This document shows, piece by piece, positions 33,449 through 50,518 of a stretch of 64,000 bases of DNA (position 1 is its first letter; every line of letters starts with the position of its first letter). This stretch comes from Piromyces finnis finn (lineage: Eukaryota > Fungi > Neocallimastigomycota): the NCBI GenBank assembly GCA_002104945.1, contig MCFH01000036.1, positions 503,929 to 567,928 of the forward strand. The letters are read 5' to 3'. The notes beneath the pieces were generated by a model. It ran no database searches. It had not been told where the DNA came from and saw only the letters and a list, made by a program, of their open reading frames with translations. Both the position numbers and the translations under genes were made by a program.

Positions 33449-34093
33449 ATGTCTTTATTCTTTTTAAATGATCCAATTCGTGAAAGTGACCGTTCTATCT
33501 TAAATAATTCTATCTTGGATGATAACAAGTGTGATTTATCTGATGACGGTAATAATTATTCTCATCCTTTCACTTCCGCTGCTTTCCCTGGTTTCTTCTT
33601 TGGTTATCCTCCTTATGCTTATCCTACTCAACTTCATTCTAATGCCACCACCATTGCTAAACCAAATACAAAAGCTACCGCCGGTAAATCAAATACAAAA
33701 TCTAGTGTTAAAGGACAATCATCCTATCATCCATTTGATAAAGATGTTTATAAATTAGTTGATTTCCGTCCAAAGAATAACTTATGTGAAGATGAAAAGA
33801 ATTACTATATTCAAATTGATTTACCAGGAATGAGTAAAGAACAAATTCATATGGAATTATCAGAAGATAATATTATTAGTATTTCAGGAGAAAGAGCAAA
33901 GAAAAATAATGTTGAAGGAATGAAATATTCAAAAATGGAATGTGAATATGGTAAATTTTCAAGATCCTTTAGTATTCCTGAAACAGGAGATATTGAAAAG
34001 ATTGAAGCCAAAATGGAAAATGGAGTATTAGAAGTTATTATTCCTAAAATTTCAATACCAAAAACTCAACGTCGTACAATTCTAGTACAATAA
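33449..34093 (+). CDS. hsp20: Small heat-shock protein, copy G
   Basis: 214 aa, same motifs. Confidence 0.95.
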   Translation: MSLFFLNDPIRESDRSILNNSILDDNKCDLSDDGNNYSHPFTSAAFPGFFFGYPPYAYPTQLHSNATTIAKPNTKATAGKSNTKSSVKGQSSYHPFDKDVYKLVDFRPKNNLCEDEKNYYIQIDLPGMSKEQIHMELSEDNIISISGERAKKNNVEGMKYSKMECEYGKFSRSFSIPETGDIEKIEAKMENGVLEVIIPKISIPKTQRRTILVQ

Positions 34094-37057: not shown

Positions 37058-40000
37058 ATGGTTCTGAATGAATTACATAATTGGAATAAGTAAGTATGAA
37101 TGTATAAATTGTTTATTAATGCTATATATATATTTTAAAATAAAATAAAAAATTATAATTTATTTATTTATTATTTTTTTTAATAAAGAATCAATGATAC
37201 TTGTAAATTTATAGTTAATAACCCAGACATTGGTATTATTAATATTTAAAAAATATAAAAATAATATTAAGTAAAATAAATTATATACATTATATTTTAT
37301 TTAATTATTATTTTTTGAAATAACAATTAATTATATTTTTATATGTTACTAATGATATAGATTCAATATATATTGAGATGAATGGATTAATTAGCGATAC
37401 ATTACATTATTCTGGAAAGGCTATGGATACATATATATATGATGAAAGAGAATTCGCAAATATTGTTTTTGATAAAATTAACAATATTGTTAATAAATTG
37501 AAACCTAAAAAGTTTTTAGGTATATTTTTCGATGGAGTTTCCCCAAAGGCTAAGATGAATTTACAAAGACAACGTCATATACGTGAATACTATAAATATA
37601 CTAACCAATATTCTTTAAAATATAATTCAATTTCTATTGGAACTGAATTTATGAAAACACTTTCTGATATAATTGAAGAAAAAATAAAAGAGATAAAAAT
37701 TAAGAAAGATTTATCTTGGAAAAAAATCAAAGTTATTTTTTCAGGACCTAATGTAGTTGGCGAGGCAGAATATAAAATACTTGATTATATAAAACGAAAT
37801 AAAACAGCAAATTCCAATAATGGATGTTATTACGAAAGAGGATGTATCTACTCTTCCAATAATAATTTTTATTTACTTTTGTTAGCTAATCATCAATATA
37901 CCTTTTCAATATATAATGAGTCCAATAATATGAACAGCAAATCAAGAAATAAAATTTTCTTTTCGATAAAAAGGTTTCGTCAGGCTATTTTAGATATGTT
38001 GTTTCCAAATTCAAATAAGGAAGATCACGACAGAATTATTGATGATTTTATTTGTCTAAGCTTTTTATCAGAAAATAACTGCTTACCTGGAGTTTATGAT
38101 GTTCTTTTTGATGATATTATTGATGTATATAGAGAAAATTACAAAACATTTGGATTTATTAATGACAAAGGAAATTTAAAGGAAGAAAATCTTAAAATGT
38201 ATTTAATTGAATTGAAAAATAAAATTAATTTTATTAATAAATTAATTTATTATTTTGATAATAAATTAAATAAAAAAGAAGATGATACATCAAATAATGA
38301 TAATGATATATATCATGATAATAAGGATAATAATTATATCGTTAAATTTGGTATGATTATAAATATTAAAGAATAGGAATAGAAATACACCTAGAGTAAT
38401 AATTAATAAAAATTAATTATTTATATAATATATTGTTAATACTAGATTTTGTAGATAATTATATTATTAAAAGGAATATCCTTTCTGATGTCTTAAGTTT
38501 CATAAATGACTCAAATTCAAAATCAATAGCTATTAATTATAAAGATCCGATTTCCATCAAATATCTAGAATTTATTTGTTCTAAATTTAACTTAGAATGT
38601 CATGTAGGAAAGTATCAAATCAAAATTATCGATTATGTTAATCAAAGAAAAACACATGATATTAATGAATTTGAGAATTATTGTAAGCAAAATAATTTAA
38701 ATATTAATGACCTTAAAAATTTAAGCAAAGAAAGTGCTTATGAAATCAAATCACACTGTAAAAACTTAAATATTAATTTTATGGAAACAATTTATTCAGC
38801 TATTTCAAAAAATCCAGAAAATGATTATTCTCATATTATGGTGCAAATTAAATTAGAAATTGATTATAGGCATAATCTTTTCTTAAAGAAAAAGAAACAT
38901 TATTATAAGGTTATAATTAAAAATCAATAAATTTCTTTTTTTTTACAATAGATAATATAAATGTAGTAGCTTATATAACATTTTTTATATTATTGCCTTT
39001 TTATATAATTATTAATATATGAATTTAAAGAAAAATATTCCAAATTGTAATAAAAAAGAATTAGTTAATCAATATATTGAAGGTATTAAATGGATGCTTA
39101 AAACCCATTATGATAAAATTCCATCGTGGAGCTGGTATTACAAATATCGTTGCTGGAAAAATGATTGCAATAGTTATGGTCCTTTTATTTCTGGTATTTG
39201 TTAATGTGTTAAATCATTATGATTATAATTTGTATTTTCTTTAATAAATTTCATTAAACATACCAATAATCAATAATACTAATACATATGTATTTTAAGA
39301 TCTTTGTGAATTTCAAGAAAATCCGGATTTTAAATTTTCACAAGATGAACCTCTTAGCCCATTTATTAATTTATTAATAATTTTACCATTTGAAAGTTTT
39401 AGTTTACTTCCAAGTTCTTATAGAAAGGTATATCTATATTATATTATTATTATTATTATTATTTTTATATAATAAATATTAAATATAACTATAACAATAA
39501 AAAAAGTTTTTGAATTCAGAAGAGTTACAAAAATTATATCCAAAAATAGATAGTTTTCCAGATAAAAGCTCAATGTTTAAAAGTCTTTCATCGCTTCCAC
39601 TTTTTGATGCGACCATTTATAATGAAAAAATTAAAGGTATTATTAAAGTATAAAATGAATAGAAGTAATAATATTTTTATTAAAGAAAATTAATTATTAA
39701 TATTAGAATTAAATGACTCTCTTACAAATGAAGAAAAAGCAAGAAATAGTTTTGGTTCAAATAAAGAATATCATTATTACAAGTATTTTTTTTATAATAT
39801 TTCATAATTTTATATAATTAAATAATTAAAATTCTAAATTAATTTATGTTATTTATTCTTATAACAACAATAATAATATTTATTTAAATAGCGATATAAT
39901 TCAACTCAGTATAAATAGTCAGATTGAGAAATTAATTGAAGATAAAGATTATAAAAGTGCTCTCAATAAAATAAATAATTTAGTAATTATTTTCTCCTTA

Positions 40001-43000
40001 TTAAATAATATATTTTATATTTATTATTATTTAATAAAATTAATGTATAATTATCATTTAATATTAAAATATAATACTTTTAATTTTTTTGTTTATATAT
40101 TAATATTAACAAAAGATAAAAATAAATCCTAGTACAGATAATCTTTGTTGTCGTGCAAATATATATCTAAAAATGTATAAACATAAAGATGCAATGAATG
40201 AATGTAAGAAAGTACTTGAAAAAAATAATAAATGTATCTCAGCTATTTTAATTCTTGCAAAATGTAACAAACGCTATGGCTATATCAATGATGCGAAGGA
40301 AAATATTAAGAGAGGATTAGAGGTATCCAAAGAAAATATCCATTTAGCGAATCACATTCCGACTTTAGAAAATGAAGTAAATAATAAATCTAAATATTAT
40401 TCATTAAATATGAATTTGATAAAACTTAGATTTATATTTTATTTGTATAGAAACTATAATAATAAATTTTTTTAAAATTAATATTTACTTTAATATTATA
40501 CTATAAATAAATAGTTAAATAATATTTATGAAATAGAAAATTCAGTTAGTGAAGTAGACCATTTAATAAGAGAAGAAAAGTATAATGAAGCACTTGTAAA
40601 GTTAGAAAATGTAATGTTAAAATATGATATGGAACTTAATTCAATCATCCCATCCAATAATACATTAAGTATTTTAAAGAGTGATGAATTATGGAAAATT
40701 CCAATTAAATGGAGATTGTTAAGGGCTGAGCTATTACTTATGAATAATGATTATTATGAAGCATTGAACGCTGTTGAAATTTTACTTGATTCAAATAAAC
40801 CTTTTAAAAATTCTGAAGCTTTAACATTAAAATATAAATTATTATATATTATGGGTAAAAGTAATATGAAGGAAACGTTTGATGGTTTTCGTGAAGCCAT
40901 TAGTATTTTTAAAGGAAATAATAGAGCAAAAGTACTAATGAAAAAAATTCCCGAATTTGAAGAAAGAAAACAAAACATTCATGATGATTTTTTTGCAAAA
41001 GGAAAGTATGAAGAAGCTATCCAACAATATGATACATTAATAAGAGAACAAAAAGAAATTTATTTAAATGGAATAGGACGAGCTATTTTATTAAGAAATA
41101 AATGTACATGCTTATTGATGGTATTAAAAGAAATAATATTTATTAATTTACTCTTTTTTTTCTTTAAAGTTTATACAACTTTGTAAAATTTTAAAATATA
41201 TAACTAATATATTATAAATCTTTATTATTCTTTAATTATCAATGAAATTAAAAGTTAAGTAAATATCAAGAATGTATTAATAATGCTAGTGCAGCTATTG
41301 AAATATTAAATCATATTGTATTTTTAGAAGGAAAACCAAAAAGCATTAAAGATTATCAAGATTGTAATCAACATTCAATTTTCTTTGAGCTTTTTAAAAA
41401 AAGATCAGAAAGTTATATGAAAATCGAAGAATTCCGAAATGCAAGAGAAGACTATGAAATTTTAAAAATAATGAAGCCATATGATAAAAGTATATTAATA
41501 GAAAAATCATTTTAATAGATATTAATAAATTAAATACTATAATTTATTTATTTTCAAGTAATATATATTTAAATTTATCCTCTCTCTTTTTTGTTTTTCT
41601 TTATATAATATCAAATTAGAATTCAGATTTGAAGAATTATACGTAAGAATGGATAAGTAAATATTTTTCTGTGAATTATATATTAGTTATATTATAAAAA
41701 AAAAATAAATAATAATTTATTTATTTATTAAAAAAAAAATGATAGAGCTCTTATTTCTGAAGATAAAAAGGAGGAAGGAAATAAATTTTTCAAAAATGGA
41801 AACTATGAGGATGCATTAAAATATTATAATGATTCATTAGGTATAGTTAATATTCTTATACTATTATTACAATTATAATAGAAAACTTATTAAAATTGAT
41901 TTTACCTTTATAAAACAATAGAATTAAATTGGAGGAATAGTAAATCTCATTTTAATAAAGGATTACTATATATGAAACTTTTAAAATATAGTGAGGCTAT
42001 CAGAAGTTTTAAAAATGCATATAAATGGAATAATAAATATTATAAAGCTATTATTAATATTTCAAAATGTTACCTTCAAATGCTTCAACCAGGAAATTCC
42101 ATAAATGAGCTTCGTAAATTGAATATTAATAGCGATAACGAATTTTATATGGAATATAATAAGAAAGTAAATATATTTCTAATTTTATTTTATTTTTAGA
42201 AATTTCTATTTATTATAGTGTCATAGCATCATAGCACTAATATGAGCGATTGATTTTCTAATATTTATTTATTTTTGTATATTAAAAATTTTATAGTTAA
42301 ATTCCTCGAAAATAATTAATCAAATTTTTAATAGAATTAAATTCAGCAAGAAAATAACGGATTATAATGAACTTTTAGAATCCTACAAAAATGCTGATTT
42401 ATCTGGCTACTGTGAAGTTCTTATTCTCAAAAAACAAATTGAAATTTTAATCGTAAGTAGTTTATTTTCTTTTATATAATGAATCATATTTTTATTTTTT
42501 TTTATTAAAAAAAAAAAAAAAAAAGTAAAATTAAAATATATATCTTTTTTTTATTAAAAAATTTTATCTGACAATAATATTTTATTTCTCTAGAAAAATA
42601 AATCTTACGATGATGGTTTTACCTATTGTACAAAAGCTATTAATATATTGAATAATATATTGAATAATAATGATCAAGAATATAATTCAGAGACTCCACA
42701 TAAAGATATGTACGAAAATTTATTGAATAGTAGAATAAAATGCTCCAAAAATTTAAGAAAATATAATGATATTGTTTCTGATTATGAAATATTAATAAAA
42801 TTAGATATTGAAAATGGTAAAAGTATGTATATTTAAATAATTAATGAATAAAAAGTATATATAAAATTATATAGTTAAAATATTTATTACTTTATACTAC
42901 CAATAGATTCTAAAAAAGTAAATTATCATAAAGAAATAGCTGAAGCAAAAGAAAATGCAGAAAAGTAAATTTATTGTATAAATAATAATATATTTTAGAA

Positions 43001-44440
43001 AATCCTATTTAACTATAAAAAAATCATCATAACAAATTTAAGAAATAAATAATTTTATTAATATTAGTTTTTTTTATTTTAAAACTATTTTTTTATTTTT
43101 CATAAAATAAGGCTAAAACGGGCGGAAGAGTTAAGAAGTGAAGGAGTAAAAGTGTATAATAATAAAGACTATAAAAAAGCTAATCTTTTATTCACACTAG
43201 CTATTTGTACAGTATACCTTTAAATACTAATAAAATTACTTTATTAAAATACTAAAAACGATTCAATTTTTTAAAATTATAGATGCATGTCCATTTCCAA
43301 ACCCTACATATTATCATAATAGAGCAGCGACAAATATGATGATGTATATATATGAAGATGCAATTGATGATTGTATGAAAGCTCTAAATTATGATGAAAA
43401 ATACGTTTCTGTTTATAAAAAAATAGCAACTTGTTGTTTCCAACTAAACAAGCCAGATAATGCTATAAATATTCTTAAACAAGGAATTGCCTCATGCCCT
43501 ACAGATGATGAATTGAAAGAAAAAGTAACTTTTTTTTTTTTAAAAAAAAATACTAAAATAATTATATTCATACTACAACAACTACTACCACTACTATTAC
43601 TAATAATAATACATTTTCTTTCGTATATATTAATATATATTAGTTAAAGCAGGCTAAAATATTAAGCAATACAAAAAAGTCTATTAATAATACTTCATAT
43701 AAAAAGACTAAAATTAGATTATATAAGCAATTACTGAAAAAATATAATGACTATGGTATATTAGGATATGTTGATGTTTTAATATATAAAGAAATTTCAT
43801 TGAATTATAGAAATGTAAGTATTAAACATGAAAGTTATACTAATAAAAAAATAAAAATAGGAAAAAATAAAAGTATAAGTTTAATAATGGTGATTATTAT
43901 TTATTATTCATTATCTATTTAAAAAATTTATAGATAAATAATGTAGATGAATGCATTTCCAATATTACAAATTCTATAAACATATTATCAATATTATTAT
44001 GTAAAAGCGAAAAAGTTTCAGCTGAAACATATAAACAATCTTCTAAATGTCAATTATTTATTGAACTTTTTACTATTAGAACCAAAGCTTTAGTTTCTGG
44101 TAAATATTATGTTGATGCCCTTAACGATTGTTTCTGTTTACATACTATGGATCCAGATAATAATGGTAAATTGTTTCTTTTTTTTTTTTTTTTTTTTGTT
44201 TTGTTCTAAATAATTAAATAATTATACTAACTTTTTTTTTTTTTCCTTTTTTTTCTGAAAATACTTGTAAAACTATATATTAAACTTTTAGAAACTGAAA
44301 GATTGTTAATAGATTTACTTCGTATGAATGATTCATATCCACCCAGACAATACAGACGTTTTAAATTTAATGATACATCATTTAATAAGTCATCATATTA
44401 TAATAATTTCTCGAATAATAATTCATCAAATAATAATAGC

Positions 44441-44538
<98 letters not shown>

Positions 44539-45148
44539 CAACAACAACAACAACAATAATAATTCGTCATCATCACATAATTATGAATATAAAAAATCAA
44601 GCAAGAAATATAACAAATTAAGTAATTATGAAATTCTTGGTTTAAATCAAAGTAATAAACCTTCTCTAAAAGAAATTAAAAATGCATATCATAAACTTGC
44701 ACTTAAATATCATCCAGACAAATGTAAAGATAAATTTATGAAAGAAGAATACGAAGAAAAAATGAAAGAAATTAATATTGCTTATGATGAATTAAAGAAA
44801 AATCATAGCAATGAAAATAATGAAAGTAATGATGATGACTATTCTTATAATAAGAATACTTCTAAAGATGCCTATAATGACTATGATGATAATAAATATA
44901 ATAATTACACTTATAATGACTATGATGACGATGAAGATGATGTTGACAATAATTATAATTACACTTATTATGATTATGATGACGATGAAGATGATGTTGA
45001 CAATAATTATAATTACACTTATTATGATTATGATGACGATGAAGATGATGATAATGATACTTATAATAATAATAAATATAATGCATATGATGATGATGAT
45101 GATGATGATTCTATTAATGATTTTTATTATTATTCTAATTTCTTTTAA
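37058..45148 (+). CDS. 23-exon XRN-like pseudo-exoribonuclease, TPR array and DnaJ-domain fusion protein (~1,870 aa estimated)
   Basis: Hand-spliced GT-AG exons stay in frame throughout, e.g. 37058-37089, 37189-37232, 37361-38349, 38446-38909, 39031-, 40116-40376, 40515-41120, 41255-41489 ... 44292-45148. XRN motifs YIEMNG, DGVSPKAKMNLQRQR, IGTEFM, GEAEYKILDYI, DDFICL, YIEGIKW, PSWSWYY, LTNEEKARN. TPR motifs such as KEEGNKFFKNGNYEDALKYY and YYHNRAA. J-domain NYEILG..YHKLALKYHPDK..MKEINIAYDEL. Confidence 0.85.
44433..44562 (+). repeat. (AAT/AAC)n poly-Asn tract in the last exon, just before the J-domain
   Basis: Read directly; in frame in ORF 44303-45148. Confidence 0.9.
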
Positions 45149-46681: not shown

Positions 46682-49600
46682 GGCATCAAATATTTTAAAC
46701 TTTATTATTAATTTAATTAAAATTATAATACATGTAATAAAAAAATTAAAAATAAAAATAAAAATAAAAAAAAATATGTTTAATTAAACACAAATGAATA
46801 AAAATTGGGTATAATGTATTCTAGTAATTTTAATTAAAGTAAGAAAGCCACTATCATACTAAAGTATAATAATTGTATTTGACTTCCAATGGGACACCGA
46901 GCCAAAGATCAAAATTTTGTCATGGAACAAAATTATGATCTCCATTGGTTGCGCTGGCCCTCCTGGCCTGTCTTACTGTTTCTTCAGCATTGACGCTCTT
47001 GGATGTTGCTTCAAACCTTTTGAACATTGACCATTGCTGGCCAATAGCAAAAGGCATGATTTTGGTTAGAAGTTCCGCGGTTACCGTCAAGAATGGTGTT
47101 CCTTCGTTAGTACCAGATTGAATCTGACGCTTACAAAGTTCTTTCCATTCCCTTGAATTGTAATTGATATTGTTAAAACTTCTTCCCCCAAGAAGGAATT
47201 TAAATATTTTACTGCACACACTAGAATAATCATACACATTAATATTCACCGGATTATTAGAACTATTACTATCATTAACTAAATTACTATCTAAATTAGA
47301 ATTATTATCTTCACTATTGCTATCATTACTAATATTATTATTTCTATTACTACTATTGTTATTATTACTATTGTTACTATTACTATTGTTATTACTACTA
47401 TTGTTACTATTACTATTAATATTATTACTATCTCTACTGATATTATCAATTTCATTATTATTGATAGGACTATTGGAATTACGTTGACTGAAAAAATTTA
47501 ATAGCTGGACTATGGAATCATAATGTTTAATACGGATATCTCTAAATGTTGGACAATCTAATAACCAATGTTTAATACTTTGATCTCCACACTTGCAACA
47601 TGGACAGTAGTTAGGACAAACTGGATCAACAAATTTGGCAGCTTTGGCAACTCTAGCATCCAACTTGTATCCGCTTCTTGCTTTCAATAGCCAGTAGAAG
47701 CCATAGGCAAACTCTGGGTATTCATAACATAATTTAATAAAATCTTTAGTTTCAATAAATTTATTATCATCATAATATTGCGCTTTGATTGAATTCCTTT
47801 TGAGATCTTTCCAATAAAAGTTTTTAACTGCTTTAACATCTCCATGTTTCTTTAGTTTTTTATCAAGTGTCCTACTTGATTTGCACCACGTGTATTTTCT
47901 AAATTTAGGAATGTAATTGACAAGGTGTGAGATAATACAATTTGAGTTTTTCCATTTGTTAAAACATCTAACCTGAGCTAATGCACATTTGGCTGACAAT
48001 GGAGGAATATTCAAATCTTTTGAGATAGAGTATAAAGATATAAACGATACAGCTTTATGAACTCCGGCAACCCATCGTAATCCTTTGTTAACATGCTTCT
48101 GAGCAATCCTAGACCTGGCTTTGTTGGATCCAAGTAATGGTGCAAAGTATGAAACTCTGCTAATCACTTGTGAGTTAAGTACTAGTTTTTTGAAAGGAAT
48201 AGGAATATTAGGATTTCTTAAGAATTTACTGACTGAAAAAAGTCCTTTCAAAACCTTGTTATTAAGAGCTTTAATAACTGGTTTAAGGGACAGATTCTTA
48301 TCAAATGGAACACCAAGATAAGTATAGCAATCAGTAGTTGGAATGGGTTGTCCTGCTAAGTAAAATGTTGGATCTCTCTTGTTCTGATTTTCTATTGATT
48401 CAGGACGAATCACCATCGTTGAACATTTCTGGATACCAAATTCCATTTCATTATACAAGGCCCATTCATTAACTCTTCTAAGCATCTTTTTTAAGCATCC
48501 TCTTGTTGGAGCACAAATAACTATATCATCTGCAAAAAGTCCACCACAGCATCGAGTGTCACCTAAACTGACTCCTAGATCTTCGCACTCTCTAAATATA
48601 TCATTAATAAAGAGATTAAAGAGAATAGGAGAAAGAGGGCAACCTTGACGGACTCCTTTCTTCACATCAAAAGATTTCGAGAATTGTCCATCTAATTTGA
48701 CATTAGCCTTAGATGTTAAATATAAATTTTTGATGAATTGTAAACTCTTACCTCGGATTCCTAAACAATCTAATTTATGGAGAATATTACCGATTGGGAC
48801 TGAATCGTATGCTTTCCTGAGATCTAAAAAGGCCAAATATGTCTCTTTATTATCTAATTGACGTCTACGGCATATTTCTTGGATTGAAATGAAAAGACTA
48901 ATACTTTCTTCCTTTTTTCGAAAACCAAATTGTTCAGGTCTAATGAAATTATTCTTTAAACCATATTCTGAGATTCTAGTGGTGACAATTTTGGAAATCA
49001 ACTTAATACCATTATTGATAAGTGATATACCTCGATAGTTATCACAATCTGTCAAATCTCCCTTCTTAGGAATAGAAACAATACTGGATTCATTCCAAGA
49101 GCTGGGGAAATCTCCATCCCAAATACGGTTAAATAATTTAAGAATAAAATTTAAACCATGAGCATCATTATCTGAAGTAGTATTACCAGAAGAATTATTA
49201 TCTGTAGCATTATTAGAATCATTACTTGATGGAATTAATGCTTTGTAAAATTCAATTGGAATACCATCCGGACCTGATGCTTTATAATTTGGAGTAGAGA
49301 GGATAGCTGACTTGACTTCATCAATACTAATATCTTGGTTGATATCCCACTCATCAAGCATAGGAAGTGAAAAACGTTTATTCGTTGGTTCTTCATACCA
49401 ATGCTCCAAATCAAGACTTACACCACTTGGGTCTGATGCAAGATTTTCGAAATGATCATGCCACACATCTAGTTGTTCTTCCGTAGCAACAACTAATTCT
49501 CCATTTTTATTTTTAATTGGTTGAGCAATAAAGAAAGAATCTTTTCCAATTTTTGCAGTTTTCTTGATCCATTTCCAGGCCTTCTTAGGATTATGACTCT

Positions 49601-49937
49601 TCATATACTCACATCCTGTTTTAATCCAATGAAGATATTCTTGCTTCCTAAATTCATTACATCTTTTGTGGATGTAATCAATGAGTTTACGGTAGATTTT
49701 AATTCTTTTAATAAATTCATCTATATCATAAATTCTTTCTTTTTTAAATCTCTTATACAACTTCATTTTGATTTTTTGGAGATTAAAAATTTGTTGTGAA
49801 ATATGAAATGAAGACTTTATAACATTATTTGCTGAGGTAATACTGAGCTCGTCTGCAATTGAAAAAGCAGTTGAAGTAAATTCTTTGGAAAGTTCATCTG
49901 TAGAAACATTAGGATCGTTGGATTTTGCTGAAAGTAT
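46642..49937 (-). mobile_element. 5'-truncated LINE, copy 2
   Basis: A37 tail (T run 46642-46678) and the same 3' UTR as the other copies. RT and CCHC are intact; the element is truncated at ILSAK just after the endonuclease domain; TSD present. Confidence 0.96.
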
Positions 49938-50518
49938 AAAAAATAATATAAATTTATAAATAATCATACCTTTAACCAATTAACAATACTATTATATTAT
50001 TGTATATATATTTTTAATATATATTATGATATGACAAACTCTAATAATAATAATAATAATTACAATAATAATAATACAATAGTAAAAAAAAAATAGTATA
50101 TAATTATGAATAAACTTTATTGTTTTATTTTTTAATATAATAATGAAGTTTTTGTTAATATTTTATAATGGATTATTTAATAATATTTTACATTTATCGT
50201 TTTTTAAATATTTATATATTTTTTGATATTTTTAATTAATATATGCTTATTTTTATATGTATTATTTTTATAGTTAATATATATCTTTAATATTTTTTTT
50301 TTCTATTTTATAATTTTTAATTTCTATTAGTAAGTAAATATAAATTTATTTATATTTATATTACTTTTGATTCCTTAATTTAATGTTATGAAATCTTAAT
50401 TTTTCATTATGTATGTAATAAAAAATTAAATATCTCATTTTTAATTAATAATTTTCTTTTTCTTTTTTTTCTTCCTAAAAACACAATTATAATTATGTTT
50501 ATAATATTTTTAACATTC

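What the first reader, a model, noticed from the sequence alone, without database searches (positions are those of the whole stretch)
37058..45148. One gene fuses an XRN exoribonuclease fold, a long TPR array and an Hsp70-recruiting J-domain
Seen: the ORF track shows only fragments, but GT-AG exons join in frame from MVLNELHNW (37058) to the stop at 45148. At the key junction the last XRN exon (LTNEEKARNSFG..YYAA|gt, ~39781) is phase-compatible with the first TPR exon (ag|C GAT ATA, ~39891), with no stop or new start between them. Established: TPR plus C-terminal J-domain is the DNAJC7/Tpr2 and DNAJC3 co-chaperone layout, and XRN1/XRN2 are stand-alone nucleases without such domains. Inference: this is a fused RNA-end-binding co-chaperone that could bring Hsp70 to RNPs such as decay intermediates, stress granules or retrotransposon particles. 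I know of no described protein with this architecture, but I cannot search.
Basis: partly seen in the sequence, partly recalled or inferred. Interest (0 to 1): 0.92.

Follow-up and report, generated by a model that had tools for sequence, protein, structure and literature searches.

The report
XRN nuclease fold fused to co-chaperone
An anaerobic gut fungus makes one long protein that joins an RNA-degrading enzyme fold (its cutting site disabled in this copy) to a helper module that recruits the Hsp70 protein-folding machine. This layout has not been described, and it hints at a direct link between RNA decay and chaperones.

Summary
Window 37058-45148 (+) holds one 23-exon, all GT-AG gene (CDS 5637 nt, 1878 aa).

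- **Layout:** XRN_N/XRN_M core, then three diverged TPR modules, a 41-Asn run, a J-domain with an intact HPD motif, and an acidic tail.
- **Transcript evidence:** Intron-free contigs from three runs (two studies) cross the key XRN|TPR joint 39782->39892 and 14 other joints. One 5023-nt contig spans the XRN exons, the whole TPR array and the start of the last exon.
- **Conservation:** The genome is Piromyces finnis. A second paralog (contig C156) and metagenome contigs show the same colinear layout. In C156 and one metagenome contig the junction intron has the same position and phase. A public Piromyces sp. E2 model already joins XRN and TPR. Relatives of the XRN part occur in Anaeromyces, Neocallimastix and Pecoramyces.
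- **Catalytic site:** The whole family has H41S and D291N. Only this copy also has D35E, D206N, D208N and R101H, so it is very probably nuclease-dead while keeping most of the 5'-phosphate pocket.
- **Origin of the tail:** The TPR-J part is homologous to a standalone TPR-J gene in the same genome.

The most likely function is an RNA/RNP-directed Hsp70 co-chaperone; this is inferred, not tested. No paper describing the architecture was found. The scan had already noted the same architecture on another piece of this genome (s1-183576, probably the C156 paralog).

The parts
37058..37089 (+). Exon 1: start codon and residues 1-11
   Evidence: ATG followed by a GT donor. The N-terminus aligns from residue 1 with public spliced models P0152 and P0154. 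The length of the X1 contig leaves about 70 nt of 5' UTR.
37189..37232 (+). Exon 2: residues 11-26
   Evidence: AG..GT signals, in frame. Same N-terminal length as paralog model P0001.
37361..38350 (+). Exon 3: XRN_N domain, tower helix and start of XRN_M (residues 26-356). Catalytic-site codons: E31 at 37375-37377, D83 at 37531-37533, E160 and E162 at 37762-37770, N192 and N194 at 37858-37866, N265 at 38077-38079. 5'-phosphate pocket K90, Q94, R97, H98 at 37552-37578.
   Evidence: Pfam XRN_N 1.9e-36. Residue-by-residue alignment to K. lactis Xrn1 3pie. Residue tables. Codon coordinates.
38446..38909 (+). Exon 4: family-specific insert between the two conserved XRN blocks (residues 356-510). 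Its first ~66 residues are R3H-like.
   Evidence: Contig piece 38445-38906 and joint to 39028/39031. AlphaFold2 mean pLDDT 71.6. R3H domains take ranks 1-4 and 6 in the wide structural search, Z 7.3-8.9.
39031..39193 (+). Exon 5: XRN_M conserved block with the SWSWYY motif
   Evidence: Pfam XRN_M 3.1e-08, 33.5 bits. PDB alignments to Xrn1 and Rat1. Joints.
39300..39427 (+). Exon 6: XRN_M
   Evidence: Joint 39192/3->39299/300. Weak XRN_M hit.
39507..39636 (+). Exon 7: XRN core
   Evidence: Record arithmetic of the X1 contig (297 nt = exons 7+8+9) and joint 39634/6->39705/7. Conserved in the paralog and in L018.
39707..39782 (+). Exon 8: last XRN exon (LTNEEKARNSFG...), ends in phase 2
   Evidence: Joints on both sides. 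The same exon end and phase occur in C156 and L018 gene 1.
39783..39891 (+). Junction intron between the XRN part and the TPR part (109 nt, GT..AG, phase 2)
   Evidence: Removed in contigs of X1, X2 and X3. No in-frame ATG lies in exon 9. Exon 9 DNA is single-copy in the genome, so there is no retrocopy.
39892..39982 (+). Exon 9: first TPR-part exon
   Evidence: Joints 39782->39892 and 39982->40116.
40116..40376 (+). Exon 10: TPR module 1
   Evidence: Contig piece and joints. TPR_2 hit at 0.001.
40515..41120 (+). Exon 11: TPR module 1, the largest TPR exon
   Evidence: Contig piece. 53% identity to the paralog and 36% to the standalone TPR-J gene on C189.
41255..41489 (+). Exon 12: TPR module 1
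   Evidence: Contig piece and joints.
41620..41656 (+). Exon 13: 37-nt micro-exon
   Evidence: Joints 41489->41620 and 41656->41746 in X1-X4.
41746..41840 (+). Exon 14: first TPR of module 2 (KKEEGNKFF...)
   Evidence: Joints. TPR_1 6.7e-05.
41922..42166 (+). Exon 15: TPR module 2
   Evidence: Contig piece. TPR_1 27.6 bits.
42297..42452 (+). Exon 16: module 2
   Evidence: 156-nt side of joint 42452->42594, plus record arithmetic.
42594..42822 (+). Exon 17: module 2
   Evidence: Joints 42452->42594 and 42822->42907.
42907..42964 (+). Exon 18: 58-nt exon
   Evidence: Joints on both sides in X1-X4.
43112..43206 (+). Exon 19: first TPR of module 3
   Evidence: Joints 42964->43112 and 43206->43283.
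43283..43524 (+). Exon 20: TPR module 3
   Evidence: Contig piece 43283-43519. TPR_1 31.3 bits and TPR_2 28.1 bits, both over their cut-offs. The donor at 43525 is inferred from GT and reading frame.
43644..43814 (+). Exon 21: module 3
   Evidence: 171-nt side of joint 43814->43934.
43934..44165 (+). Exon 22: module 3
   Evidence: Joint 43814->43934 and X4 pieces reaching 44165.
44292..45148 (+). Exon 23: linker, 41-Asn run (44441-44563), J-domain (about 44621-44806, HPD codons 44711-44719), 113-aa D/N/Y-rich tail, stop TAA at 45146-45148
   Evidence: One open frame. Pfam DnaJ 1.5e-13, 51 bits. Coordinates. The length of the X1 contig puts its end at about 44460, inside the Asn-codon repeat.

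Best explanation
**Shown.** This is a real, expressed single gene of Piromyces finnis that encodes a 1878-aa protein. It belongs to a family so far seen only in anaerobic gut fungi (Neocallimastigomycota).

- In full-length members an XRN-type 5'-3' exoribonuclease core is joined in one reading frame to one or more TPR modules and a C-terminal J-domain.
- The core carries a family-specific insert whose first part is R3H-like.
- The TPR-J tail is homologous to a standalone TPR-J co-chaperone gene in the same genome.

**Inferred.** In this copy three of the seven metal-binding acidic residues are Asn (D206N, D208N, D291N) and one is Glu (D35E). The base-stacking His41 is Ser. Three of the four 5'-phosphate-pocket residues and the conserved Trp motif remain.

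The XRN part therefore most likely no longer cuts RNA but can still dock on 5'-monophosphate RNA ends or RNPs. The HPD J-domain would then switch on Hsp70's ATPase at that site. The TPR modules would hold clients or the tails of Hsp70/Hsp90. The protein would thus work as an RNA/RNP-directed Hsp70 co-chaperone that remodels or disassembles RNPs.

Other family members keep six of the seven acidic residues and may still be nucleases coupled to the same chaperone tail.

**My odds.** Single fused gene: 0.95. This copy is nuclease-dead: 0.85. The RNA-directed co-chaperone mechanism as stated: about 0.5.
For: - **Gene model:** 23 GT-AG exons, open for 1878 aa.
- **Transcripts:** Spliced contigs of 5023, 3467 and 2540 nt from three runs (two studies) cross the XRN|TPR joint and all other laid joints. 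A fourth run from a third study supports eight TPR-part joints. Exon 9 DNA is single-copy, so the contigs are not a retrocopy.
- **Domains:** XRN_N 1.9e-36, XRN_M 3.1e-08, DnaJ 1.5e-13, TPR_1 31.3 bits against a cut-off of 27.8.
- **Active site:** Alignment to Xrn1 3pie and residue tables against 24 canonical XRNs and 11 family members.
- **Most conserved family block:** The DGVSPKAKMNLQRQR pocket and the GEAE motif are invariant.
- **Family clade:** 100/100 support on a long stem.
- **Same layout elsewhere:** Colinear XRN-TPR-J in paralog C156 and on metagenome contigs L002 and L018. The phase-2 junction intron is conserved in C156 and L018.
- **Public model:** Piromyces sp. E2 (855 aa) joins XRN and TPR.
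- **Origin of the tail:** Standalone TPR-J gene on C189, E 9e-27 to the TPR part, with HPD.
- **Insert:** R3H-like fold.
- **Organism:** Identified through ORX59232.1, which sits on a contig of the same length as C156.
Against: - No RNA binding, Hsp70 stimulation or nuclease assay exists. The function is inferred from residues and homology.
- Contigs cannot exclude additional shorter isoforms or internal starts.
- The pocket is not perfect: R101 is His here and His41 is lost family-wide.
- The Hsp70/Hsp90 'carboxylate clamp' of the TPRs was judged only by eye. It looks complete in none of the three modules (4 of 5 residues at best).
- The J-domain motif is degenerate in two relatives (HLD in C156, HLN in L002), so Hsp70 recruitment is not a constant of the family.
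- Extra contigs that overlap short parts of the gene and then diverge remain unexplained.
Confidence: 0.6

Rival explanations
1. The XRN part is not an RNA binder at all. It is a protein-protein scaffold, for example one that pairs with the paralog on C156, which keeps the catalytic Asp residues but has lost HPD. The two copies would then split nuclease and Hsp70-recruiting roles in one complex.
For: The losses in the two P. finnis paralogs are reciprocal. The window copy has D35E/D206N/D208N with HPD intact. C156 keeps D35/D206/D208 but has HLD. Both keep the same overall layout.
Against: Nothing shows that the two proteins interact. The 5'-phosphate pocket block is the most conserved stretch of the family, this copy included, which argues for retained ligand binding. 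L018 gene 1 has both the Asp residues and HPD, so a split of roles is not a family rule.
Confidence: 0.15
2. This copy is still an active 5'-3' exoribonuclease. The chaperone tail serves to clear proteins from the RNA ahead of it or to fold and regulate the enzyme.
For: D86, E176 and E178 are kept and position 35 is still acidic. The other 11 family members keep six of the seven acidic residues wherever the sequence covers them, which implies selection for catalysis in the family.
Against: D206 and D208 are both Asn and D291 is Asn. To my knowledge, D206A and D208A alone abolish yeast Xrn1 activity. His41 is also lost.
Confidence: 0.1
3. The copy is a relaxed, slowly decaying duplicate with no specific role of its own. 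The dead active site is drift in an AT-rich genome (GAT to AAT).
For: It is the only one of 12 family members with these substitutions. Each Asp-to-Asn change is a single G-to-A step.
Against: The frame is open for 1878 aa across 22 correctly spliced introns. The gene is expressed in runs of three studies. The HPD motif, the pocket block and the TPR modules are conserved at about 50% identity to relatives, as elsewhere in the family.
Confidence: 0.1
4. These are two neighbouring genes (an XRN-like gene and a TPR-J gene), and the fusion is a read-through or assembly artefact.
For: The tool warns that a contig across two genes shows no single transcript. Public models of relatives stop after the XRN part.
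Against: The joint is a GT..AG splice that removes 109 nt in three runs. There is no stop at the end of exon 8 and no ATG in exon 9. The same phase-2 intron occurs in the paralog and in L018. The gap of about 110-130 nt is too short for a terminator plus a promoter. An independent public model joins XRN and TPR. The truncated public models end inside introns.
Confidence: 0.02

Closest known systems
DNAJC7 (TPR2/TTC2) and the TPR-J layout in general (also DNAJC3/p58IPK)
   Same: TPR repeats followed by a C-terminal J-domain with an HPD motif. The TPR-J part is homologous (E 9e-27, 36% identity) to a standalone TPR-J gene in the same genome, and that gene's TPRs hit Hsp70/Hsp90 co-chaperone-type TPR proteins in the PDB. 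DNAJC7 is described as a co-chaperone that binds Hsp70 and Hsp90 and also binds clients directly (PMC8429438, PMC9025444; abstracts only).
   Different: A 676-aa XRN core sits at the N-terminus. There are three diverged tandem TPR modules instead of one set, a 41-Asn run, and a D/N/Y-rich tail after the J-domain. The carboxylate clamp is not verified. Strict orthology of the standalone gene to DNAJC7 rather than DNAJC3 was not established.
XRN1 and XRN2/Rat1 5'-3' exoribonucleases
   Same: XRN_N and XRN_M domains. The 5'-phosphate pocket residues K93, Q97 and R100, the acidic residues D86, E176 and E178, and the SWSWYY block are all present.
   Different: The family forms a separate long-stem clade. 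H41S and D291N occur family-wide, and D35E, D206N, D208N and R101H occur in this copy. The core ends right after the LT.EE..RN.FG motif, so it has none of the Xrn1 C-terminal domains. It carries an R3H-like insert between the conserved blocks and a TPR-J tail.
Ssd1, an RNase II-fold pseudonuclease of fungi (own knowledge; the term appears in PMC8552689 and PMC8783092, which I did not read in full)
   Same: An exonuclease fold that lost catalytic residues and is used as an RNA-binding module. This is the closest working analogy for this copy.
   Different: Unrelated fold (RNase II/RNB, 3'-5'), and no chaperone module.
J-domain proteins with nucleic-acid or ribosome-binding modules (Zuotin/DNAJC2, DNAJC17 with an RRM, DNAJC21); own knowledge
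   Same: The same principle: a J-domain is brought to RNA or an RNP by a separate binding module so that Hsp70 acts locally.
   Different: None of them uses an XRN fold or combines it with a TPR array.
R3H domains (SPAG7, Smubp-2, PARN, Fap1)
   Same: The first ~66 residues of the insert superpose on R3H domains: Z 8.9, 8.4, 7.7, 7.5 and 7.3, with rmsd mostly 1.4-2.8 A over 55-66 residues (4.8 A over 74 residues for PARN 1ug8).
   Different: The R-x3-H signature is K-x3-F in the family. The model has only moderate confidence (pLDDT 71.6), and the Z values are near the tool's stated noise ceiling.

Membership tests
XRN 5'-3' exoribonuclease family | XRN_N domain (Pfam PF03159) over the curated cut-off | tested here: met
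   126.1 bits against a cut-off of 22.9, E 1.9e-36 on exon 3.
XRN 5'-3' exoribonuclease family | XRN_M helical domain (PF17846) | tested here: met
   33.5 bits against a cut-off of 23.8 on exon 5, with further pieces on exons 3 and 6. Only exon-sized pieces could be scanned.
XRN 5'-3' exoribonuclease family | Seven conserved acidic residues of the two-metal site (D35, D86, E176, E178, D206, D208, D291; K. lactis numbering) | tested here: not met
   The residues here are E, D, E, E, N, N, N. All 24 canonical XRNs keep all seven.
XRN 5'-3' exoribonuclease family | 5'-monophosphate pocket (K93, Q97, R100, R101) and base-stacking His41 | tested here: inconclusive
   K, Q and R are kept and R101 is His. 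His41 is Ser in the whole family. Binding was not measured.
XRN 5'-3' exoribonuclease family | 5'-3' exonuclease activity on 5'-monophosphate RNA | not testable with these tools
   Needs an enzyme assay.
J-domain proteins (Hsp40/DnaJ) | J-domain (PF00226) over the curated cut-off | tested here: met
   51 bits against a cut-off of 27.8, E 1.5e-13.
J-domain proteins (Hsp40/DnaJ) | His-Pro-Asp motif between helices II and III | tested here: met
   HPD at residues 1734-1736, codons 44711-44719. The motif is HLD in paralog C156 and HLN in L002.
J-domain proteins (Hsp40/DnaJ) | Stimulation of Hsp70 ATPase | not testable with these tools
   Needs a biochemical assay. I did not run a complex prediction because a pass would not have changed my odds.
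DNAJC7/TPR2-type co-chaperones | TPR repeats N-terminal to a C-terminal J-domain | tested here: met
   TPR_1 31.3 bits and TPR_2 28.1 bits over their cut-offs on exon 20, near the cut-off on exon 15, and weaker hits on exons 10, 11 and 14. The J-domain is in the last exon.
DNAJC7/TPR2-type co-chaperones | Homology of the TPR-J part to a bona fide standalone TPR-J gene | tested here: met
   C189 locus: TPR E 9e-27 and J-domain E 1e-10 with HPD. The model's XRN part found no match in the ~8 kb fetched upstream, and the own-genome XRN_N search found no hit on C189.
DNAJC7/TPR2-type co-chaperones | Two-carboxylate clamp (K, N, N, K, R) that binds the EEVD tails of Hsp70/Hsp90 | not tested
   Inspected by eye only. 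Module 2 has about 4 of 5 residues; modules 1 and 3 have fewer. No alignment-based or binding test was made.
DNAJC7/TPR2-type co-chaperones | Stand-alone protein of about 500 aa with nine TPRs | tested here: not met
   1878 aa, with an XRN core in front and three tandem TPR modules.
R3H domain | R3H fold (three-stranded sheet packed against two helices) | tested here: inconclusive
   R3H domains take ranks 1-4 and 6 in the wide structural search, Z 7.3-8.9. Foldseek found no hit at E <= 0.001. Model pLDDT is 71.6.
R3H domain | Conserved Arg and His spaced by three residues | tested here: not met
   The family has K-Y-L-[EK]-F at that place.

The most novel reading that the evidence does not exclude
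Anaerobic gut fungi have a chaperone-coupled RNA-decay machine. An XRN-type enzyme is welded to a DNAJC7-like Hsp70/Hsp90 co-chaperone, so that Hsp70 strips or remodels proteins on the RNA at the 5' end where decay proceeds. In P. finnis the two paralogs have split the job. The window copy is nuclease-dead with HPD intact. The C156 copy keeps its nuclease residues but has lost HPD. They would work together, which would make them a natural separation-of-function pair.
Probability: 0.12. Interest if true: 0.85.

Novelty: new variant of a known kind. Interest (0 to 1): 0.66.

Why it matters
- **A possible new link.** A natural covalent fusion is strong 'Rosetta-stone' evidence for a functional link. 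Here the link is between 5'-3' RNA decay (or 5'-end recognition) and the Hsp70/Hsp90 chaperone system. Such a link is discussed for stress granules, P-bodies and co-translational decay, but I know of no dedicated adaptor for it.
- **Ready-made variants.** The family offers natural variants for dissecting the link. This copy has a dead nuclease and an intact J-domain. The C156 paralog has its nuclease residues intact and a degenerate J-domain. One metagenome member has both intact.
- **Annotation.** Public gene models of the relatives I could see are truncated at 155-855 aa and named only 'Xrn1 N-terminal domain-containing' or 'hypothetical', so the architecture is invisible in current databases.
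- **Limits.** The function is untested, and the family is so far confined to one fungal phylum.

Tried and rejected
- **Metagenome scan.** A scan of JGI metagenome contigs with the family alignment found no confirmed locus.
- **Contig look-ups.** Exact-protein contig look-ups for P0001 and P0006 returned nothing.
- **No full-length annotated fusion.**
  - The representative-protein search, which has no length filter, found no full-length annotated XRN-TPR-J protein. The longest family hit was 535 aa.
  - A search with the 855-aa Piromyces sp. E2 model, which can see proteins of 470-1496 aa, found none longer.
- **PDB sequence searches.** Searches with TPR pieces gave only generic or designed TPR hits and could not tell DNAJC7 from DNAJC3.
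- **Foldseek.** The search with the insert model gave no hit at E <= 0.001. The R3H reading rests on the wide structural search.
- **Assembly numbers.** A paper I checked for P. finnis assembly figures did not hold them. The organism was identified through ORX59232.1 instead.
- **Literature.** Searches for the architecture and for XRN pseudonucleases found nothing relevant.
- **Rejected readings.** I rejected two separate genes or read-through, and a processed retrocopy (exon 9 DNA is single-copy).
- **Not attempted.** I did not run a complex prediction of the J-domain with Hsp70. I made no carboxylate-clamp alignment. I placed no reads on exons 1-3 or on the J-domain itself, because only one call of 6000 letters was allowed and I avoided the long Asn-codon repeat.


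Full report
**What is in the sequence.**

The window has 21% G+C. Between 37058 and 45148 on the + strand, 23 exons join in one reading frame. Every intron begins GT and ends AG. The CDS is 5637 nt and the product is 1878 aa with no internal stop.

Exon 8 ends at 39782 in phase 2. A 109-nt intron follows. Exon 9 starts at 39892. Exon 9 holds no ATG, and exon 8 has no stop.

**Transcript evidence.**

Four public runs of the same organism hold 21-59% of the sampled words of the stretch, which is what an intron-free copy would give. I laid them on 38401-44400.

- Three runs from two studies each have one long contig (5023, 3467 and 2540 nt). These lie on exons 4 onward with every intron removed.
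- The joint 39782->39892 is among them, together with 14 other GT..AG joints.
- The record numbering between the listed pieces leaves room for exactly the predicted exons:
  - 297 nt for exons 7+8+9.
  - 129 nt for exons 13+14, after allowing for a 3-nt ambiguous cut.
  - 538 nt for exons 16-19.
- The 5023-nt contig extends 1139 nt upstream of 38445. That equals exons 1-3 plus about 70 nt of leader.
- It extends 577 nt beyond 43519, so it ends at about 44460, inside the Asn-codon repeat of the last exon. Both extensions are inferences from lengths.
- A fourth run from a third study supports eight joints of the TPR part but does not cover the XRN part.

The runs are labelled only as a guess at RNA, but intron-free contigs can come only from spliced RNA or from a retrocopy. 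Exon 9 DNA occurs once in the genome, so a retrocopy is excluded for this assembly. A GT..AG splice that joins exon 8 to exon 9 means one pre-mRNA spans both parts.

Contigs cannot show transcript ends, so additional shorter isoforms are not excluded.

**Domains.**

I could scan exon pieces only.

| Domain | Exon | Score |
|---|---|---|
| XRN_N | 3 | 126 bits, E 1.9e-36 |
| XRN_M | 5 (pieces on 3 and 6) | 33.5 bits, cut-off 23.8 |
| TPR_1 | 20 | 31.3 bits, cut-off 27.8 |
| TPR_2 | 20 | 28.1 bits, cut-off 27.0 |
| TPR_1 | 15 | 27.6 bits, just under cut-off |
| DnaJ | 23 | 51 bits, cut-off 27.8 |

Weaker TPR hits fall on exons 10, 11 and 14. The HPD motif is intact at residues 1734-1736.

The TPR region (residues 676-1600) consists of three diverged tandem modules. 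Module 2 aligns with module 3 over its whole length (E 1.5e-13), and module 1 aligns with module 3 in two blocks. After the modules come a run of 41 Asn, the J-domain, and a 113-aa tail made mostly of Asp, Asn and Tyr.

**The XRN part is divergent, and in this copy it is probably inactive.**

Residue-by-residue alignment to K. lactis Xrn1 (3pie) gives the following.

| K. lactis position | This copy |
|---|---|
| D35 | E |
| D86 | D (kept) |
| E176 | E (kept) |
| E178 | E (kept) |
| D206 | N |
| D208 | N |
| D291 | N |
| K93, Q97, R100 (pocket) | kept |
| R101 (pocket) | H |
| H41 (base stacking) | S |

- In an alignment with 24 diverse canonical XRNs, all seven acidic positions are kept in every canonical protein.
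- Across 12 family members, H41S and D291N are universal.
- The members include Anaeromyces robustus, Neocallimastix sp., Piromyces sp. E2, the P. finnis paralog and metagenome or Logan sequences.
- D35E, D206N, D208N and R101H occur only in the window copy.
- The other members keep the remaining six acidic positions wherever their sequence covers them. P0153 lacks that stretch, and two members have D at the E178 position.
- The pocket block DGVSPKAKMNLQRQR and the GEAE motif are the invariant core of the family.
- The SWSWYY block of XRN_M is kept.
- To my knowledge, D206A or D208A alone inactivates yeast Xrn1.

I therefore read this copy as a pseudo-nuclease that may still dock on 5'-phosphate ends. 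The family at large may still cut RNA.

**A family-specific insert.**

Exon 4 (residues 356-510) sits between the two conserved XRN blocks. It is conserved at 38-48% identity among family members.

- An AlphaFold2 model built from five sequences reaches pLDDT 71.6, and above 80 for most of residues 11-60.
- In a search against 48,161 representative chains, R3H domains take ranks 1-4 and 6: SPAG7 Z 8.9, Fap1 8.4, Smubp-2 7.7, PARN 7.5, 1whr 7.3.
- Foldseek alone gave no hit at E <= 0.001.
- The R-x3-H signature is K-x3-F in the family.

I treat this as an R3H-like fold of moderate confidence. It would be a second possible nucleic-acid-binding element.

**Organism and family.**

The best database relative of exon 3 is P0001. 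This is ORX59232.1 of Piromyces finnis, and it lies on a contig of 1,653,768 nt, exactly the length of contig C156 of the window's genome. The window is therefore from P. finnis, an anaerobic gut fungus.

The genome has four XRN loci: two canonical ones (C124 and C171), the window (C163), and a paralog on C156.

- **C156 paralog.** It shows the same colinear order of XRN, TPR modules and J-domain within about 8 kb. Its phase-2 intron sits at the same place between the XRN and TPR parts. It keeps D35, D206 and D208, but its J-domain motif reads HLD. Its public model stops at 535 aa, running into an intron.
- **Metagenome contigs.**
  - L002 has XRN, a short TPR part and a J-domain whose motif reads HLN.
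  - L018 gene 1 is colinear with the window model from residue 25 to the J-domain. Its Asp residues and HPD are intact, and it has the same junction intron.
  - A second family gene follows L018 gene 1 in tandem.
- **Named species.** The family search returned Anaeromyces robustus (582 aa), Neocallimastix sp. (591 aa), Pecoramyces ruminantium (a 155-aa fragment) and Piromyces sp. E2 (855 aa).
- **The E2 model.** It already joins XRN_N, XRN_M and TPR in one 'hypothetical protein'. It aligns with window residues 28-158 and 261-998 at about 50% identity.
- **Tree.** The family is a 100/100 clade on a long stem, apart from the canonical XRNs.
- **Database gap.** Outside this clade the search of 1.84 billion representative proteins gave only canonical XRNs, with a jump from E 1e-81 to about E 1e-30.

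**Origin of the tail.**

The largest TPR exon also finds a third locus in the genome, on C189. That locus is a compact TPR-J gene with an HPD motif. It matches the window's TPR part at E 9e-27. The model's XRN part found no match in the ~8 kb fetched upstream of it, and C189 is not among the genome's XRN_N hits. Its TPRs resemble Hsp70/Hsp90 co-chaperone TPR proteins in the PDB, including TOM70, DNAJC3, Tah1 and RPAP3.

The fusion thus looks like an XRN paralog joined to a DNAJC7/DNAJC3-like co-chaperone gene, followed by internal duplication of TPR modules. The number of modules differs between members.

**How it most likely works.**

Shown: one gene, one spliced transcript, and the domain order and residue states above.

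Established for the families (abstracts of PMC8429438 and PMC9025444; the rest is my own knowledge):
- An HPD J-domain stimulates Hsp70 ATPase.
- DNAJC7-type TPRs bind Hsp70/Hsp90 tails and clients.
- The XRN basic pocket recognises a 5'-monophosphate.

Inferred: this copy docks through its XRN part, and perhaps its R3H-like insert, on 5'-monophosphate RNA ends or RNPs. It then activates Hsp70 there to remodel or clear proteins. Its relatives may do the same while degrading the RNA.

The working analogies are pseudonucleases such as Ssd1 and RNA- or ribosome-tethered J-proteins such as Zuotin or DNAJC17 (own knowledge).

The rival explanations are listed separately. The most interesting one is a division of labour between the two P. 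finnis paralogs, whose losses are reciprocal.

**Novelty and verdict.**

I found no paper that describes an XRN-TPR-J protein or an XRN pseudonuclease. No annotated full-length protein of this architecture turned up in the collections I could query.

It is a new combination of well-known domains, so I class it as a new variant of a known kind. It is real, expressed, and conserved across several genera of one phylum.

A first-stage note had recorded the same architecture on another piece of this genome (s1-183576, probably the C156 paralog). Another note had recorded the dead active site (s1-190358). I tested both points independently here.

Noticed in passing
window 33449-34093 (+): A single-exon small heat-shock protein gene (Pfam HSP20, 1.5e-19) lies 3 kb upstream of the XRN-TPR-J gene on the same strand. 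A chaperone neighbour may be coincidence.
   Followed up: partly
window 46920-49979 (-): A 1019-aa open frame with a reverse transcriptase domain (RVT_1, 6.8e-36) and an Asn/Ser-rich tract. It is a non-LTR retroelement directly downstream of the gene.
   Followed up: partly
window 38446-38909 (exon 4): The family-specific insert in the XRN core has an R3H-like fold in its first ~66 residues (Z 7.3-8.9 to five R3H domains), but K-x3-F stands in place of R-x3-H.
   Followed up: yes
G000:C156 about 1083167-1091184 (L012+L013): This is a second XRN-TPR-J gene in the same genome. Its catalytic Asp residues are kept but its J-domain motif is HLD. Its public model ORX59232.1 stops at 535 aa inside an intron.
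   Followed up: yes
L018 77-7164 and 9896-12240 (also L014): Two family genes lie in tandem on one 12.7-kb metagenome contig (19% G+C). Gene 1 has the full long TPR array, the Asp residues and HPD. Gene 2 is cut by the contig end.
   Followed up: partly
G000:C189 about 99900-101700 (L025): A compact standalone TPR-J gene with HPD. It is the likely source type of the fusion's tail.
   Followed up: partly
window 39806-39929, 40601-40800, 41832, 43041, 43627: Several runs (all four at most of these places) hold extra contigs that match short parts of the gene at >=95% and then continue with unrelated sequence. One example is the loose end before 39929, shared by X1-X3. Exon 9 DNA is single-copy in the genome, so their origin is unexplained.
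   Followed up: partly
window 44441-44563 and 44807-45145: A run of 41 Asn codons (mostly AAT) lies before the J-domain. A 113-aa tail of Asp, Asn and Tyr with three near-repeats (DYDDDEDD...) follows it. The RNA contig breaks inside the Asn repeat.
   Followed up: no
window 41620-41656: A 37-nt micro-exon (exon 13) is spliced correctly in all four runs.
   Followed up: yes
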